A stretch of DNA of 64,000 nucleotides from positions 52,266,001 to 52,330,000 of the forward strand of contig NC_042998.1 of assembly GCF_006345805.1 (NCBI RefSeq). Reading direction: 5' to 3'. The stretch comes from Octopus sinensis (taxonomy: Eukaryota). This document shows positions 4,001 to 62,025 of the stretch, piece by piece (the first letter of the stretch is position 1; every line of letters begins with the position of its first letter). The position numbers and the translations under genes were made by a program. The notes beneath the pieces are model-generated. The model was not told where the DNA came from. It saw nothing but the letters and a program-made list of their open reading frames with translations, and did no database searches.

Positions 4001-4702
4001 TAGTAGATGTATAGCTAACCACTAAATTCTTTTTGTAAAAGTTCACAACCTGTGAACTCCATGAGAACTTTGAAGGGTAGTTAAAAACCTTACCTAGCAG
4101 TTTATTATTTTCAACTTCAATGAATTTGTAGTGTTTATAAGTGCGATTCCAAGAGGAACAATGTGTAGCTATAGCTTCCACAAAAATTCTTAATCCTGAG
4201 ACAGTGAATGCTCAAAGTTTTGAAAGTTTGTTAAATAAACTATTAAATTTCAGATCAACAGATGCATTGGACTCAGTTAAGGGAAGAGTTTATCTTTGAA
4301 AGTCAGTCTGATGTGATTGAAATTGTGATAATGCAAGGGTTACAAAAATGGTAGCATGAAATATTCCAAGAACAGCAAAATTTTATTCCAATCTTTATAA
4401 TTCTCTTTCAAATTACATTAATTGTATTTTCATCTACAGATTGTGTCTTTGGAGAAGATTTGGAGGAAGATTCTATTGTTTACAAATATTACAAATCAAA
4501 GATAGTTCATTATCGCTATCAAGAATCCATCATTGATTGTGTGGATTTGAAGAACTCAAGAGAAATATTTGATGGGATGACTCTGCCCATACTATTAGTT
4601 TTTGACATACCTTTGCAAATATTTACTACATAACTAGCATCTTTTACTTAAGTCATTGTTTATCAACCACAGGGTATCTTTTGTGATCATGGTATCAATT
4701 CA

Positions 4703-9034: not shown

Positions 9035-10585
9035 CTAGATATAGCAGAATCACTACCGGAACTAGAAAAGAAATTTCGGGTGTGGAAGCAAGGGTTAGAA
9101 TCAAAGGGCCTTAGAGTAAATGTAGCGAAGACCAAAGTTATAGTAAGCAGAAAGGCGAACTCAGCACACACACACCCTCGGGCAGGTGACCCTGCTCGAT
9201 CTGTAGGAAAGGTGTAGGTAGAAACTCCATAAGATGCACCCAATGTAAGCTATGGACGCATAAGAGGTGCAGCAACATCATAGGGAAATTAACTGATAAG
9301 ATAGCTTTCATGTGCGGCAGATGCACAGGGACAATAGACACCACAGACACTCAGAAAACAGATTCCATTACACTCCAGGGGGGAGAAACTAGAAGTAATT
9401 GATAGTTTTCGCTACCTGGGTGACCAAGTTAGTAGTGGAGGTGGATGCTCAGAGAGTATCACCACTGGAATACGAATAGCCTGGGCAAAGTTCAGAAAGC
9501 TCCTACCCCTACTGGCGACAAAGAGTCTCTCACTCAGAGTGAAAGGTAGATTGTATGATGCATGTGTGTGAACTGCCATGCTTCATGGTAGTGAAACATA
9601 GGCTGTGACTGCAGAGGACATGCGTAGACTTGAAAGAAATGAAGCTAGCATGATCCGCTGGATGTGTAATGTCAGTGTGCACACACGACAGAGGGTAAGC
9701 ACCCTGAGAGAAATGCTGGACATAAGAAGCATCAGATGTGGTGTGCAAGAGCAACGCTTGCGATGGTATGGTCATGTACTGCGGATGGATGAGGAGAGAT
9801 GTGTGAAAAAGTGCCACTCCCAGACAGTTGAAGGTATCAGGGGGAGAGGTAGACCCAGGAAGACATGGGATGAGGTAGTCAAGCATGACCTCAGAGCATT
9901 GGGCCTCACTGAGGCAATGGCGAAGGACCGAGATCTCTGGAGATATGCTGTGACTGCAAAGACCCGGGCTGCTTCCTGCACCAGTTCCGCATAGCCCCTG
10001 CCCATTCAAAGCACCCTGGATTCCAGAACGTCCTGCTGTGCTTGAGGAGACCTGTTGAGTCAAGTACATGAACATGAACATCGAAATAAATATCAATGGA
10101 AATAGTAGTTGTGATACCTGTGCCGGTGGCACATAAAAAGCACCATCTGAACGTGGCCATTGCCAGCGCTGCCTCGACTGGCTTCTGTGCCGGTAGCACA
10201 TAAAAAGCATCATCTGAATGTGGCCGATGCCAGCGCCGCCTCGACTGGCTTCTGTGCCGGTGGCACATAAAAAGCACCATCCGAATGTGGCTGTTGCCCG
10301 CGTCGCCTTGGCTGGCTTCCGTGCCAGTGGCACGTTAAAAGCTCCAACCGATCGTGGCCGATGCCGGACCCCCCCTGGCACCTGTGCAGGTGGCACGTAA
10401 AAAGCACCCACTACACTCGCGGAGTGGTTGGCGTTAGGAAGGGCATCCAGCTGTAGAAACTCTGCCAGATCAGATTGGAGCCTGGTGCAGCCCCTGGCTT
10501 CCCAGACCCCGGTCGAACCGTCCAACCCGTGCTAGCACGGAAAATGGATGTTTAATGATGATGATGATGATGATGATGATGATAT
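9035..10585 (+). mobile_element. 5'-truncated RTE-clade LINE: broken RT C-terminus, 3'UTR with 67-bp tandem repeats and (GAT)n tail
   Basis: Translations WKQGLESKGLRVNVAKTKVI, F(R)YLGD and MRRLERNEASMIRWMC..LRWYGHVLRM..RGRGRPRKTW..DRDLWRYAV; frameshifts and stops present. Confidence 0.92.
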
Positions 10586-11521
10586 ACAGTTTAGATTATT
10601 TTTCTAAATTCTGCTTTTCTGTTTACTTTCACACTCATGGAAGAGAAAACATCATATCTCTGTTTGCATAATTTGTCAACTGACATCCCTGAATCTTTAA
10701 GATTCTTGTCAACTGCATATAATATTGATTCCACACCATAAACTTTATGTAAAGCTCACACTACAAGTTGGCAAAGTCTAAACAAAACCAGACTGATTTT
10801 CAGTCAGACTAACATAAAAATTTCATCAAGGAATGAATATATGAAACAGAAACACTACATAATTGGCTATTTGGCTAAAAAGTCATCTCATATCACTAAT
10901 ATATCTTTGTATCATAAGTGATTGTCCAAGAGGAATGTCTGACCCAGAAAGCTCCTTGGTTTCAGAAAGTGCAGATGTGGTTGAAATAAATAATTTCTAA
11001 CTTCATATATTAAGTCAAAATGGAATGCTTTATTGTTATTCTTGCTATTTTGTAGAAAACCATTCATAATATGCTCAACTGATACTTCATTTTATCAACC
11101 CCTAAAGGATGATAGGCAATGTTTGCCTCAGCAGAACTTGAACTCCTGTAGTGAAGATATTAAACAGTCCCACAGCGTGGCACCTTGGGGAAGTGTCTTC
11201 TACTATAGCCTCGGGCTAACCAAAGCCTTGTATATGAATTTGGTAGACAGAAACTGAAAGAAGCTCATCGTATATATGTATATATATATATACATATATA
11301 TATATACAAATAGATGAGTGTATTTTACCTTGTTAACAATTAACACGGAAAAATAAATAAATAGTTACCAGGGCAGCAAAAATCTCACAAGTAAAGATGT
11401 TGTAACTCCTTGTTTATAAAGGTTGAAACTTTGTGTTTGCGTTGAATATTAATAGCGTTCTGTCTATCGCTATACGAATCCATCATTTTTTGCTAAAATG
11501 TTGTATTGACGAGTTTCGTTT

Positions 11522-11616
11522 TTTCACTTTCCCGAAGAGAAGATTGCATTGTTTATATCTTTTATTCTTTTGAATAAGTATCAGTGGAATTTTCGAAACA
11601 TATGTAGAAAGTAAAA
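11522..11616 (+). ncRNA. Type I hammerhead ribozyme motif (variant core CCGAAGA, GUA triplet) in a ~350-bp Penelope/retrozyme-like element at ~11300-11655
   Basis: Stem I TTTCACTTTC/GAAAGTAAAA; core CCGAAGA 11532-38; 13-bp stem II with one mismatch; GAAAC-ATAT-GTA 11595-11606. Confidence 0.7.
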
Positions 11617-11693
11617 TATTTGTTTAAACCTGCGTTAACTCCATTTTTTATTCATATATATATATACATATATATATACATATATATATATAT

Positions 11694-11853
11694 ACACTCT
11701 CGGAGTGGTTGGCGTTAGGAAGGGCATCCAGCTGTAGAAACACTGCCAGATCTGACTGGACTGGTGCAGCTTTCGGGCTCCCCAGACCCCAGTTGAACCG
11801 TCCAACCCATGCTAGCATGGAAAGCGGACGTTAAATGATGATGATGATGATGA

Positions 11854-11855
<2 letters not shown>
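11694..11855 (+). mobile_element. RTE 3' tail fragment
   Basis: cactctcggagtggttggcgttaggaagggcatccagctgtag...gcggacgttaaatgatgatg. Confidence 0.85.
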
Positions 11856-36475: not shown

Positions 36476-37340
36476 TTGGCAGAATTTTCAGTGTTAGTGG
36501 AAGGTATCTTGTGCTATTTACTCCTGCTGTTCGTACTCTAAGTCCTAGCATGGTAGATTTGATCTGTCATCTGTTTTACCTTCATTAACTAGTCCTTTGG
36601 TGCCTTTAACAGAGTTCACACTGTTATGAGTATTCAGACAAGGTCTCCTGTTTGCAGATTCATTACTTCTTTTCTTCACTCTCAGCGACCCTGAAGCAAT
36701 AGACAAAGGCTTTTGCTCTCTGACTAAATAATAAAAAAAATTTCTTTGCAGTTGTTAAGAAGTTTGCTTCCCAACTACATGGTTCTGGGTTTAGTCCCAC
36801 TACATGGTACCATGGGCAGCTGTCTTCTACTATAACTTCAGGCCTACCAAAGCCTTGTGAGTAGAAATTGAAAGAAACCCACTGCATATATTTATTCATT
36901 TGTGTGTGTGTGTGCAGCTGGATGCCTTTCCTGTCACCAACCATTACCCATTTCCAAGAAAGGTAATATTTTCCCATAACCAGACATGTTTTCATGGAAG
37001 ATTGTGAATGAAGGACAATTGCAAGACGTGATATTTGTTCACAAATCCTATTATGCAATGCCAAGGCAAGGAGACAGTAACATGGACACCCCACCACACA
37101 TGCATATGTGTGTCTGTATATATATATATATATATATATATTTGAGTAGTTGAATGAATTATCTTATTAAGGATAATTCGAAAGATAACCAATACTTGGG
37201 TAGCAAATTCACATCAGAAAGAACACGGTTGAAGCTACGTCACTAGGGCATAGACTACGTGCTTTCATGCAGAAATTTGTATGTTTATTTTAAAAATATA
37301 AGTTTATGAAAGAATGGAGTTGAACTACTTGTTAACAAAT

Positions 37341-37439
37341 TTCCTTTATTTTCGACATATGTTTCGAAGGCTGCATATTCCTAATTCCGAAGGAATAAGG
37401 AGTACATTATGCAGATTTCTCATCAGGAAAGGCAAGGAA
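37341..37439 (-). ncRNA. Type I hammerhead ribozyme motif (canonical core, GUC triplet)
   Basis: Reverse-complement copy of 37518-37616. Confidence 0.8.
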
Positions 37440-37517
37440 CTTATGTCGACATCAAAATGCACAAAAAACTTTTAGCTGACTGCTCTCAAAGAGCCCATGG
37501 CGATAATGACTCATAAG

Positions 37518-37616
37518 TTCCTTGCCTTTCCTGATGAGAAATCTGCATAATGTACTCCTTATTCCTTCAGAATTAGGAATATGCAGCCTTCGAAACATAT
37601 GTCGAAAATAAAGGAA
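37518..37616 (+). ncRNA. Type I hammerhead ribozyme motif (canonical core, GUC triplet)
   Basis: TTCCTT-GCC-TTTC / CTGATGA 37531-37 / stem II GAA..CTGCATA...TATGCAG..TTC / GAAAC-ATAT-GTC 37592-37603 / GAAA-ATA-AAGGAA. Confidence 0.82.
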
Positions 37617-37654
37617 ATTTGTTAACAAGTCGTTCAACTCCATTCTTTCATAAA

Positions 37655-37715
<61 letters not shown>

Positions 37716-37759
37716 TATATATATATATAATATATATATATATATACACATGTATATAG

Positions 37760-45680: not shown

Positions 45681-46361
45681 GTAAAACATTAGAGAAAGGA
45701 GCCTAAATGTTTTTTGCCATACATACCAAGGCATCCAGTTATAAAAATCATGCCAAAACAGACAATTTGGTGTCCATTGTCCAATCTTTCATCAGAATGA
45801 ACTAAAACAGACCAGGAAAATACACATGGATAGAAGAGTTGCTGAAGAGGTCACAAATGTGTGATGAAAGATTTCCAGACAATAGACATAGGATAAAATA
45901 ATAATAATAATAATAAACAAGTGAAGAATGAATACATAGTGCAATGACTATCTTGAAATATATTAATATTGTGTTTTCTTTTCCTTTTATGCAAACTGTG
46001 AAATTTAGCCCAAACACCCTGGAATATCACCTCTGACATTCATTTACAGCCACTCAAATTGGATTCTGGTAGTGTATTGTAATATCTGATTCCATCAATC
46101 AAATCATTTACATTAATGTAGACTAAACCATCACTCACTAATACATAAAATCTGATATAAAAACTTAAAGCATTTATAAACTTCACCATCATTCCTAATA
46201 ACTCCAGTAAAAACTCACTTCTAACAGATATATCTATCTACATATGATTTTGTTCACGTCAGTGTGTGGTGGCTGTGCATGTGTGCACATATGTATGTGT
46301 GTGTGTGTGTATATATATATATATGTGTGTGTGTTGTGTATGTACACATATATATATATAT

Positions 46362-50719: not shown

Positions 50720-51395
50720 TACCGTAAGACTAGGCAAGCCATGTGAGATTGTATCTGTTGCGGATGTCAGTGTCACATAATTGCTCCATTTAAAAGTACC
50801 CTTCAATCGTTGGGTAATATGCCGTGCTTGTGAAGACCTCATAAACCAGGTGAAATCATAGTTGTGGCTGATGCCATTGCCACATGACTGCCACCAGTGC
50901 CGGTGGCACGTAAAATGCACCATTTGAGTGTGTCAAATGCCAGTGCTTCCTGACTGGCTCCCATACCAGTGGCACATAAAAAGCACCCTTCAAGCATGAC
51001 CGATACCAGTGCTGCCTGACTGGCACCTGTGCCAGTGGAACATAAAAAGCACCATCTGAGCATGGTCGATGCCAGTGCTGCCTGACTGGCTCCCATTCAA
51101 CTGTGACTGATGCTAGTGCCACCTGACTGGTACCCGTGCCAGTGGCATGTAAAAAGCACCATTCGAGTGTGGTTAATGACAGTGCCACCTGACTGGCTCC
51201 CATGAAAGTGGGATGTAAAAAGCACCCACTACAATCCCAGATTGGTTGGCATTAAGAAGGGCATCAGGCTGTAGAAACCTTGCCAAATCAGATTGGAGCC
51301 TGGTGCAGCCTCCCAGCTGGCCAGTCCTTAGTCAAACTGTCCAACCCATGCCAGCATGAAAAGTGGGTGTTAAATGACAATGATGATGATGAATC
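50720..51395 (+). mobile_element. Diverged RTE 3'UTR with about six degenerate 67-bp units and tail
   Basis: Repeated gtggcacataaaaagcacc..gccagtgctgcctgactggc; terminal ccagcatgaaaagtgggtgttaaatgacaatgatgatg. Confidence 0.8.
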
Positions 51396-61274: not shown

Positions 61275-62025
61275 TATATATATCATCATCATCATTTAAC
61301 GTCCGCTTTCCATGCTAGCATGGGTTGGACGGTTCAACTGGGGTCTGGGGAGTCTGAAGGCTGCACCAGGCCAGTCCCGAGAGTGTAGTGGGTGATTTTA
61401 TGTGCCACCGACACAGGTGCCAGACGAGGCTGGCGAACGGCCACGCTTGGATGGTGTTTTTTATGTGCCACCGACACAGGTGCCAGACGAGGCTGGCAGA
61501 CAGCCACGCTCGGATGGTGTTTTTATGTGCCACCGACGCAGGTGCCAGATGAGGCTGGTGAACGGCCACGATCGGATGGTGTTTGTTACGTGCCCACAGC
61601 ACGGGGCCAGTTGATGTGGTACTGGCTACGGCCACGTTCGGATGGTTTTCTTATGTGCCACCGGCACTGGTACCACAAAGATACAAATTCCATTGATGTT
61701 CATCTATTTTGATTTGTTTTGATTTGTTTTGATTTTCACTTGCCTCAACAGGTCTTCACAAGTGTCACAAGAAGGAAGGTATGCACAGGTGGACTGACTA
61801 CGTCCCAGGTAGGGGCCACAGGTTATGGCCTGACTAGTCTTGCCGGGTCTTCGGATGGTGTTTTTATGTGCCACCGACACAGGTGCCAGATGAGGCTGGC
61901 GAACGGCCACGATCAGATGGTGTTTGTTATGTGCCTACAGCACGAAGGCCAGTCGATGCGGTACTGGCTATGGCCACGTTCGGATGGTTTTCTTGTGTGT
62001 CACCGGCACTGGTACCACAAAGATA
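61275..62025 (-). repeat. Tandem array of RTE 3'UTR monomer with 54-bp subrepeats and (GAT)n tail
   Basis: Junction ccgggtcttcggatgg at 61843-58; about 1.5 monomers. Confidence 0.85.

What the first reader, a model, noticed from the sequence alone, without database searches (positions are those of the whole stretch)
37297..37660. 364-bp near-perfect palindrome with a canonical hammerhead on each strand
Seen: 149-bp arms with two mismatches around a 66-nt spacer, flanked by TA. Each arm has a fully canonical core (CTGATGA; G10.1-C11.1; GAAAC-ATAT-GTC, predicted cleavage after 37603 on +). Stem I is 4 bp plus a 3x3 internal loop plus 6 bp. Known: inverted partial terminal repeats are typical of Penelope insertions. 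Inference: any read-through transcript contains one ribozyme plus its own antisense. It would therefore choose between self-cleavage and a ~149-bp dsRNA hairpin (an ADAR or Dicer substrate). Arm identity suggests a recent event.
Basis: partly seen in the sequence, partly recalled or inferred. Interest (0 to 1): 0.8.

Follow-up and report, generated by a model that had tools for sequence, protein, structure and literature searches.

The report
Head-to-head Penelope-type hammerhead insertion
A 364-bp near-perfect inverted duplication in octopus-like DNA carries a Penelope-retrotransposon-type hammerhead ribozyme motif on each strand, and it is most likely an ordinary two-sided retrotransposon insertion into a TA microsatellite rather than a new RNA switch.

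Summary
The arms 37297-37445 and 37512-37660 are 149 nt long with 2 mismatches and a 66-nt spacer. Each arm encodes a complete type I hammerhead on its own strand, with cleavage after 37603 (+) and after 37354 (-).

My own descriptor finds only these two sites in 64 kb, against 0.023 expected by chance. Rfam RF00163 aligns end to end at 22.7 bits, below its cut-off of 34, penalised by a 50-nt insertion in helix II. Helix III is one base pair plus AUAU, so it reads CAUAUG. [quoted passage not shown] It has a mutated core and also ends directly on (TA)n.

The window is octopod DNA.

The best reading is a 5'-truncated 3' end of a PLE, or of a PLE-dependent element, copied from both strands of a cut (TA)n target. 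PLE insertions are known to form inverted copies like this.

The proposed choice between self-cleavage and dsRNA is lopsided. The full hairpin folds at -255 kcal/mol against about -20 for the ribozyme fold, and this ribozyme class needs a second sense copy.

This is a new member of a known kind. No parent PLE was found, and no genome-wide copy survey was possible.

The parts
37297..37660 (.). The unambiguous (non-TA) element is 37300-37657.
37297..37445 (-). Left arm: a 5'-truncated element copy in minus orientation, with its 3' end pointing left
   Evidence: nhmmer 37301-37444 minus strand, E 4.9e-46
37341..37439 (-). Minus-strand type I hammerhead domain. Core is at 37426-37420 and predicted cleavage is 3' of the C complementary to 37354.
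   Evidence: RF00163 22.7 bits, 37348-37432 minus strand
37446..37511 (.). 66-nt asymmetric centre. It is probably the extra 5' extension of whichever copy is longer, but its orientation is unresolved. It has no similarity to the arm or to anything else in the window.
37512..37660 (+). Right arm: a 5'-truncated element copy in plus orientation, with its 3' end at 37657 abutting (TA)n
37518..37616 (+). Plus-strand type I hammerhead domain: helix I 37518-37530 / 37604-37616, CUGAUGA 37531-37537, helix II 37538-37591, GAAA 37592-37595, helix III C-AUAU-G 37596-37601, and cleavage after C17 at 37603
37658..37758 (.). (TA)n microsatellite, the presumed insertion target. The insertion sits at its left edge.
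11511..11655 (+). Diverged solo relative of the arm. Helices I and II are kept, the core is mutated to CCGAAGA, the cleavage site is GUA, there is no inverted partner, and its 3' end abuts (TA)n at 11656.

Best explanation
This locus is a dead-on-arrival, two-sided insertion of the 3' terminal ~150-215 nt of a hammerhead-bearing Penelope-like element (PLE), or of a short non-autonomous element that PLE machinery mobilises. It sits at the edge of a (TA)n microsatellite in an octopod genome. Proposed mechanism (inferred): the GIY-YIG endonuclease cuts the TA repeat. Both exposed 3' ends prime reverse transcription on the 3' region of element RNA. The two cDNAs stop early, at about 149 nt and about 215 nt, and are joined head to head. 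That gives two arms with identical outer ends and an asymmetric 66-nt centre. The hammerhead on each strand is simply the ribozyme that this family carries near its 3' end, copied twice in opposite orientation. Its 1-bp helix III with an AUAU loop (CAUAUG) means it can cleave only after pairing with a second sense copy, as a double hammerhead. At this locus any read-through RNA folds into a 149-bp hairpin instead, so the ribozymes are almost certainly silent passengers. Shown here: the anatomy, the motif, the conservation pattern and the TA association. Inferred: the link to a PLE, priming from both strands, and ribozyme inactivity.
For: (1) The motif is complete and is not a chance match. (2) Helix III is the palindromic minimal type described for PLE and newt-type hammerheads that work as dimers (PMC4209133; PMC6765202; PMC7229834). 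Two copies of the 99-nt domain cofold as a double hammerhead with an 8-bp intermolecular helix III, at -48.0 kcal/mol against 2 x -20.3 for two monomers. (3) A second, independent family member at 11511-11655 is 61% identical in alignment columns. The GAAA-to-C17 block is 92% identical, and TTCGAAACATATGT is the longest identical run. Helix II is only 50% identical yet stays paired: 93.8% of cells pair, 4 pairs are compensatory, and slid controls give 30-54% with 0-2 compensatory pairs. This is the pattern expected of a structured RNA, not of transposon terminal inverted repeats (TIRs). (4) Both independent 3' ends (37657 and 11655) abut (TA)n. The per-position chance of that is about 0.0023 each. 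A (TA)n insertion bias is documented for Naiad PLEs, with the same microsatellite bias hypothesised for the Neptune clade, and canonical PLE hammerheads lie near the 3' end (PMC8557442). (5) The solo copy has no inverted partner, so the inverted arrangement belongs to the insertion event, not to the family. (6) PLE insertions are typically 5'-truncated and often have an adjacent inverted 5'-truncated copy (PMC8557442). A purified PLE protein cleaves and extends both target strands in vitro (PMC11167929). (7) The window is octopod DNA, and Penelope elements are abundant in octopus genomes (PMC8967140).
Against: No PLE reverse transcriptase or GIY-YIG coding sequence was found among the 20 ORFs scanned, which included those within about 6 kb of the element. 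No parent element could be retrieved, so the PLE link rests on resemblance. There are only two independent family members. The Rfam score is below the gathering threshold and would be E~0.6 at the scale of the whole window. Helix II, at 54 nt, is far longer than the 6-8 bp described for PLE minimal hammerheads. The left end keeps only ATAT of the presumed TA target. Self-cleavage is untested. A DNA-level fold-back duplication of a solo copy would look the same.
Confidence: 0.65

Rival explanations
1. A solo 5'-truncated copy inserted first, and the second arm arose later by a DNA-level event such as fold-back or template switching during replication or repair. On this reading the palindrome has nothing to do with the retrotransposition mechanism.
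For: The arms are near-identical with an asymmetric spacer, which replication fold-back also produces. A 10-nt palindrome, ATGTCGACAT, sits exactly on the junction between the left arm and the spacer (37443-37452) and could mark a switch point.
Against: Both outer ends fall at exactly the same element position, which is the element's 3' terminus. That is what two priming events on the same RNA end predict. A fold-back duplication would have to stop precisely at the element boundary. Inverted partner copies are a documented PLE signature (PMC8557442).
Confidence: 0.15
2. It is a non-autonomous DNA transposon (MITE) with ~149-bp terminal inverted repeats and a TA target-site duplication, moved by a Tc1/mariner-like transposase. 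The hammerhead match is incidental.
For: The size (358-364 bp), the long inverted arms and the TA flanks fit a palindromic MITE.
Against: The only other family member is a single arm with no inverted partner, even though an arm profile recovers that copy at E 1e-31. The outer terminus is not conserved between copies, while the catalytic block is the best conserved part and helix II covaries. The TA flank is part of a 100-bp (TA)n run, so no duplication can be called. A full hammerhead is expected only 0.023 times per window by chance.
Confidence: 0.08
3. The locus has been taken over by the host. It is transcribed, and the competition between hairpin formation and ribozyme cleavage, or the hairpin alone, produces a regulated dsRNA that feeds ADAR editing or small-RNA pathways.
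For: A 149-bp perfect duplex is predicted for any read-through RNA. Both ribozyme cores are intact, and the two arm mismatches lie outside the core.
Against: There is no evidence of transcription. The energetics are extremely one-sided, -255.5 against about -20 kcal/mol. This ribozyme class needs two sense copies and each transcript has one. The intact cores are explained by the insertion being young. In vitro, hammerhead mutants of a PLE did not affect insertion, and no cleavage-site read ends were seen in RNA-seq (PMC11167929).
Confidence: 0.07
4. It is a DNA copy of a small rod-shaped, viroid-like or retrozyme-like circular RNA that carries a hammerhead in both polarities.
For: The size (~360 nt), the rod-like fold and one hammerhead per polarity resemble ambisense hammerhead circular RNAs. 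Animal retrozyme monomers are ~170-400 nt and AT-rich (PMC7229834).
Against: There is no tandem or permuted arrangement. The ends of the DNA copy are not at the cleavage sites. The arms form a perfect duplex rather than a quasi-rod. The solo relative has one arm and the same 3' end on (TA)n, which fits a linear retroelement end.
Confidence: 0.03

Closest known systems
Hammerhead ribozymes of Penelope-like elements (pLTR hammerheads; Cervera & de la Pena 2014, PMC4209133; Lunse et al. 2017 as cited in PMC6765202)
   Same: Both are type I with a full catalytic core and a G10.1-C11.1 pair. Both have an extremely short, palindromic helix III that implies cleavage as a dimer. Both lie near the element's 3' end and are associated with 5'-truncated and inverted copies. 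The element also sits on a (TA)n target, as described for some PLE clades (PMC8557442).
   Different: Helix II here is a 54-nt imperfect rod rather than 6-8 bp. [quoted passage not shown] No reverse transcriptase or endonuclease ORF, and no direct pLTR pair, is present at or near the locus.
Animal non-LTR retrozymes (Cervera & de la Pena 2020, PMC7229834; Li et al. 2026 preprint, 10.64898/2026.07.22.740005)
   Same: Both are short, AT-rich, non-coding units carrying a type I hammerhead. Retrozymes are related to PLE pLTRs and are thought to depend on PLEs.
   Different: Retrozymes are defined by direct tandem repeats, so that two sense ribozymes excise a monomer that circularises. Here the two copies are inverted, so no unit-length RNA can be released.
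Newt satellite 2 / axolotl HHR_Amex1 hammerheads
   Same: [quoted passage not shown]
   Different: Those sit in ~330-bp tandem satellite repeats and have the conserved loop 1-loop 2 tertiary contacts. Here the internal loops of helices I and II are not conserved in the second copy.
Palindromic MITEs with a TA target-site duplication (Stowaway / Tc1-mariner derived)
   Same: The overall shape is the same: ~360 bp, long inverted arms and TA at both flanks.
   Different: The family member at 11.5 kb is a solo arm. The termini are not the conserved part, and an RNA structure is conserved instead.
L1 twin priming (inverted 5'-truncated LINE-1 insertions; cited from general knowledge)
   Same: A second priming event on the other target strand creates an inverted segment within a single retrotransposition event.
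   Different: In L1 the inverted piece comes from a more 5' part of the RNA. Here both arms are the same 3' terminal segment, as is typical of PLE insertions.

Membership tests
Hammerhead ribozyme, type I | Conserved core nucleotides C3 U4 G5 A6 N7 G8 A9 ... G12 A13 A14 A15.1-U16.1, with H17 at the cleavage site | tested here: met
   CUGAUGA 37531-37537, GAAA 37592-37595, U16.1 37602 and C17 37603, with the same on the minus strand
Hammerhead ribozyme, type I | Three helices around the core, with helix I open-ended | tested here: met
   Helix I is 4+6 bp, helix II is 3+7 bp plus a distal hairpin, and helix III is 1 bp (2 bp counting A15.1-U16.1). The MFE of the 99-nt domain contains helices I and II, and the hammerhead-constrained fold lies 2.3 kcal/mol above the MFE. 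Four compensatory pairs are seen against the 11.5-kb copy.
Hammerhead ribozyme, type I | Score at or above the Rfam RF00163 gathering threshold (34 bits) | tested here: not met
   22.7 bits, model 1-45/45, E 0.0011 in a 116-nt search. The model is matched over its whole length and the penalty comes from a 50-nt insertion in helix II. There is no hit in searches of the whole window or of 561 nt.
Hammerhead ribozyme, type I | Site-specific self-cleavage | not testable with these tools
   Needs in vitro transcription of monomer, tandem-dimer and full-palindrome constructs
PLE-associated hammerhead | Very short helix III with palindromic 15.2-16.2 / loop 3, implying a dimeric active form | tested here: met
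   CAUAUG at 37596-37601. The cofold MFE of two domains is a double hammerhead with an 8-bp intermolecular helix III. The feature is described in PMC4209133 and PMC6765202.
PLE-associated hammerhead | Location in the pLTR or 3' region of an element encoding a PLE reverse transcriptase and GIY-YIG endonuclease | tested here: inconclusive
   Pfam on 20 ORFs, including those within about 6 kb, found no RT or GIY-YIG domain. No octopus PLE sequence could be retrieved for comparison. A short truncated insertion is not expected to carry the ORF.
PLE insertion architecture | 5' truncation, an adjacent inverted 5'-truncated copy, and a microsatellite (TA)n target | tested here: met
   Head-to-head arms share an outer terminus and have unequal inner ends. 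Both family 3' ends lie on (TA)n. The architecture is described in PMC8557442.
Animal non-LTR retrozyme | Direct tandem repeats, each with a sense hammerhead | tested here: not met
   The two copies are inverted. The arm profile finds no further copy in the window, and Tandem Repeats Finder reports no array at the locus other than the flanking (TA)n run.
MITE (TIR DNA transposon derivative) | Both terminal inverted repeats present in family members, with termini the most conserved part | tested here: not met
   The solo copy at 11511-11655 has no inverted partner. The outer ~10 nt are not conserved, while the catalytic block is 92% identical. This rests on only one extra copy.
MITE (TIR DNA transposon derivative) | Defined target-site duplication (TA) | tested here: inconclusive
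   The right flank is a ~100-bp (TA)n run and the left flank ends in ATAT, so no duplication can be distinguished.

The most novel reading that the evidence does not exclude
The inverted pair is an expressed long-hairpin RNA locus in an octopus, an animal with exceptionally heavy A-to-I editing. On this reading an internal or flanking promoter yields either a 149-bp ADAR/Dicer substrate or, from transcripts that start inside the element, a free sense hammerhead that cleaves in trans-dimers. Penelope-type two-sided insertions would then be a recurrent source of ribozyme-gated dsRNA genes.
Probability: 0.05. Interest if true: 0.6.

Novelty: new member of a known kind. Interest (0 to 1): 0.3.

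Why it matters
The locus is a clean, young example of a known phenomenon: two-sided, head-to-head insertion of a Penelope-type element end, carrying its dimer-dependent hammerhead, into a TA microsatellite. It has three practical uses. First, it shows that Rfam's type I model misses this variant at default settings because of a 54-nt helix II, so genome scans for hammerheads in cephalopods will under-count such elements. Second, the shared outer termini and the unequal inner ends are the footprint expected if both target strands prime reverse transcription, as shown in vitro for one lizard PLE. A genome-wide catalogue of such pairs could test that mechanism in vivo. Third, such insertions create long perfect hairpins that could feed dsRNA pathways. 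None of this changes current understanding unless expression or cleavage is demonstrated.

Tried and rejected
1. More family copies from public DNA. Scans of metagenome contigs and viral contigs for TTCGAAACATATGTHGAAA gave 34 loci, none with a CUGANGA core upstream, so all are chance matches.

2. Copies found through incidental ORFs. Exact look-ups of the 63-aa and 53-aa arm ORFs found nothing on record. A homology search with the 63-aa ORF found no candidate.

3. A shared 'module A' upstream of the arms (37144-37296 against 11308-11470). The pair aligns collinearly from the TA boundary with score 52, against 31.7 +/- 6.1 for shuffles. However, a scan of the whole window shows chance scores up to 58 in AT-rich DNA, and nhmmer finds no relation. 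Rejected.

4. The idea that those upstream segments are old inverted arms. Alignments were not significant (p~0.07 at best), and the arm profile does not detect them. Rejected.

5. Assigning the spacer to one arm by comparison with the solo copy. The scores are 114 and 108, which is not decisive. The spacer has no similarity to the arm or to anything else.

6. A PLE coding remnant nearby. Pfam found none in 20 ORFs.

7. Exact look-ups of the window's LINE-like ORF to place the window in a named assembly. Not on record.

8. One 20-kb Octopus vulgaris locus (L035) contains no arm copy.

9. Supplements of PMC8557442 are not held, and PMC5785218 is not held.

10. I did not use the lizard PLE consensus from the supplement of PMC11167929 as a query. 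The top hits would have been vertebrate copies, not the octopus parent.

Full report
OBSERVATION

The repeat finder gives arms 37291-37445 / 37512-37666 (155 nt, 97% complementary) separated by 66 nt. Comparing 37297-37445 with the reverse complement of 37512-37660 gives 149 nt with two mismatches (37326/37631 and 37388/37569) and a 66-nt spacer at 37446-37511. The outermost TAT/ATA of each arm merges into the TA-rich sequence around it. The right flank is a ~100-bp (TA)n run (37657-37758), and the left flank reads ...TTTAAAAATAT. The unambiguous element is therefore 37300-37657, and 'flanked by TA' cannot be read as a target-site duplication.

THE HAMMERHEAD

- Helix I 5' strand 37518-37530.
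- CUGAUGA 37531-37537.
- Helix II 37538-37591, closed by G10.1-C11.1.
- GAAA 37592-37595.
- C-AUAU-G 37596-37601, then U16.1 at 37602 and C17 at 37603.
- Helix I 3' strand 37604-37616. Helix I is 4 bp, a 3x3 loop, then 6 bp.
- The mirror image on the minus strand is 37341-37439, with cleavage after the complement of 37354.

A generic type I descriptor that I wrote finds only these two sites in the 64 kb. Markov-1 random windows give 0.023 hits per window.

Rfam at gathering threshold finds nothing in the window, and a 561-nt search at E<=10 also found no hammerhead. When only the 116 nt around each domain are searched, the filters are laxer. RF00163 Hammerhead_1 then aligns over its full length (1-45/45) to both arms at 22.7 bits, E 0.0011, against a gathering score of 34. 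It treats 50 nt of helix II as an insertion. The Rfam model therefore recognises the motif end to end but scores it below its curated cut-off. At the scale of the whole window that score alone would not be significant.

FOLDING

The 99-nt domain has an MFE of -20.3 kcal/mol that already contains helix I and the whole of helix II. Enforcing the hammerhead skeleton costs 2.3 kcal/mol. Two copies cofold at -48.0 kcal/mol into the classic double hammerhead, with an 8-bp intermolecular helix III (ACAUAUGU) and helices I formed in trans.

That matches the literature. [quoted passage not shown] They are inactive as monomers and cleave, often weakly, as dimers (PMC4209133; PMC6765202; PMC7229834).

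The complete palindrome RNA folds into a single hairpin of -255.5 kcal/mol.

A SECOND FAMILY MEMBER

BLASTN, a pattern search and an nhmmer profile of the arms each find exactly one more relative in the window, at 11511-11655 on the plus strand. It is 61% identical to the arm in alignment columns. The conservation is uneven:
- The GAAA-to-C17 block is 92% identical, and the longest identical run is TTCGAAACATATGT.
- Helix II is only 50% identical.
- The outer terminus is not conserved.

On the alignment of the three domains the hammerhead helices are 93.8% paired with four compensatory pairs. Versions with the 3' partners slid by 1-3 columns give 30-54% paired and 0-2 compensatory pairs.

This copy has a mutated core (CCGAAGA, so U4 is lost) and a GUA site. 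Rfam does not recognise it. It is a decayed copy of a family whose ancestor had this RNA structure. It has no inverted partner, and its 3' end abuts a (TA)n run at 11656.

The chance that a given position is immediately followed by a TA run is about 0.0023 in this window. Two independent 3' ends on TA runs are therefore not a coincidence.

CONTEXT

A LINE-like ORF at 9602-9991 has a 71%-identical relative annotated in Octopus vulgaris. A 20-kb O. vulgaris locus shares 211 interspersed-repeat matches of 78-93% identity with the window. The window is therefore octopod DNA. Penelope elements are among the abundant, expanded retroelement families in octopus (PMC8967140).

No reverse transcriptase or GIY-YIG domain was found in 20 ORFs, including those within about 6 kb of the element. 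The palindrome is thus an orphan fragment, not the end of a resident full-length element.

WHAT IT MOST LIKELY IS

PLE insertions are highly 5'-truncated and often carry an inverted 5'-truncated copy next to them. Canonical PLEs carry their hammerhead near the 3' end. A (TA)n insertion bias is documented for the Naiad clade, which lacks canonical hammerheads. The same microsatellite bias has been hypothesised for the hammerhead-bearing Neptune clade through a shared endonuclease linker (PMC8557442). A purified PLE protein cleaves and extends both strands of its target in vitro, unlike R2 or L1 (PMC11167929).

The anatomy here is what two priming events on one cut site would leave. Both arms share the same outer terminus, which is the element's 3' end. 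They have unequal inner ends, which accounts for the 66-nt asymmetric centre. The insertion sits at the edge of a TA repeat.

The arms differ by 1.3%. This fits one recent event, since the other family member is only 61% identical.

I put this at 0.65. The link to a PLE rests on resemblance, because no parent element could be retrieved.

RIVALS

- Later DNA-level fold-back duplication of a solo insertion (0.15). It would have to end exactly at the element boundary. The 10-nt palindrome ATGTCGACAT on the junction between the left arm and the spacer (37443-37452) is the only hint for it.
- MITE with long terminal inverted repeats and a TA duplication (0.08). The solo relative, the non-conserved termini, the conserved catalytic block and the covarying helix II all argue against it. 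This rests on one extra copy.
- Host-adopted dsRNA/ribozyme switch (0.07). There is no evidence for it.
- DNA copy of an ambisense viroid-like circle (0.03). There is no evidence for it, and the anatomy argues against it.

It is correct that each transcript would contain one ribozyme plus its antisense. The 'choice', however, is not balanced, for three reasons:
- The hairpin is more than 200 kcal/mol more stable than the ribozyme fold.
- The antisense arm is transcribed first on either strand.
- This class of hammerhead needs a second sense copy, which a transcript of an inverted pair does not contain.

In the one PLE studied in vitro, hammerhead mutations did not affect insertion, and no RNA-seq read ends mapped to the cleavage site (PMC11167929). 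I therefore expect these ribozymes to be silent at this locus. Whether the locus is transcribed is unknown.

NOVELTY AND LIMITS

This is a new member of a known kind. Its one unusual feature is a 54-nt helix II, which hides the motif from default Rfam scans.

The main limit is that no eukaryotic genome could be searched by DNA. Attempts through metagenome and viral collections, incidental ORFs and one octopus locus all came back empty.

Noticed in passing
window 45842-45895 (+): A relaxed minimal-hammerhead scan picks up CTGAAGA-g-GTCACA-aatg-TGTGAT-GAAA. It has the unpaired base after position 9 and the 6-bp helix II described for PLE minimal hammerheads. Helix I is only 3 bp and helix III is not palindromic, so it may be a chance match.
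   Followed up: no
window 37443-37452: A perfect 10-nt palindrome, ATGTCGACAT, sits exactly on the junction between the left arm and the spacer. It shares the 8-mer TATGTCGA with the hammerhead cleavage-site region (37598-37605). Alignment of the spacer to the arm is not significant, so this is either coincidence or a microhomology footprint.
   Followed up: partly
window 9602-9991 (+): A 130-aa open frame resembling the C-terminal tail of a non-LTR retrotransposon protein. It is 71% identical to a 'Hypothetical predicted protein' of Octopus vulgaris and 63-76% identical to ORFs on short ENA metagenome contigs. It was used only to place the window taxonomically.
   Followed up: partly
window 10118-10408, 50903-51203, 61391-61675: Arrays of a 62-67-bp tandem repeat (GTGGCACATAAAAAGCACCATC...) lie inside an interspersed repeat that also occurs in the O. 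vulgaris locus L035 at about 4149-4494.
   Followed up: no
window 11270-11307 and 11656-11697; 37115-37143 and 37657-37758: Both hammerhead loci lie between two TA runs, 348 bp and 514 bp apart. The sequences between the left TA run and the arms (11308-11510 and 37144-37296) looked weakly alike, but the similarity did not hold up in the window-wide and nhmmer controls. Their origin is unknown.
   Followed up: yes
whole window: The window is very rich in microsatellites. There are 58 perfect (TA)>=5 runs covering 1.7% of the bases, plus many trinucleotide arrays. GC content is 36%. No Pfam domain was found in any of the 20 ORFs tested.
   Followed up: partly
window 11700-11855: A GC-richer block (ctcggagtggttggcgttaggaagggcatccagctgtagaaac...) ending in (ATG)n lies between two TA runs, immediately after the solo hammerhead copy. 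It looks like a SINE-type interspersed repeat.
   Followed up: no
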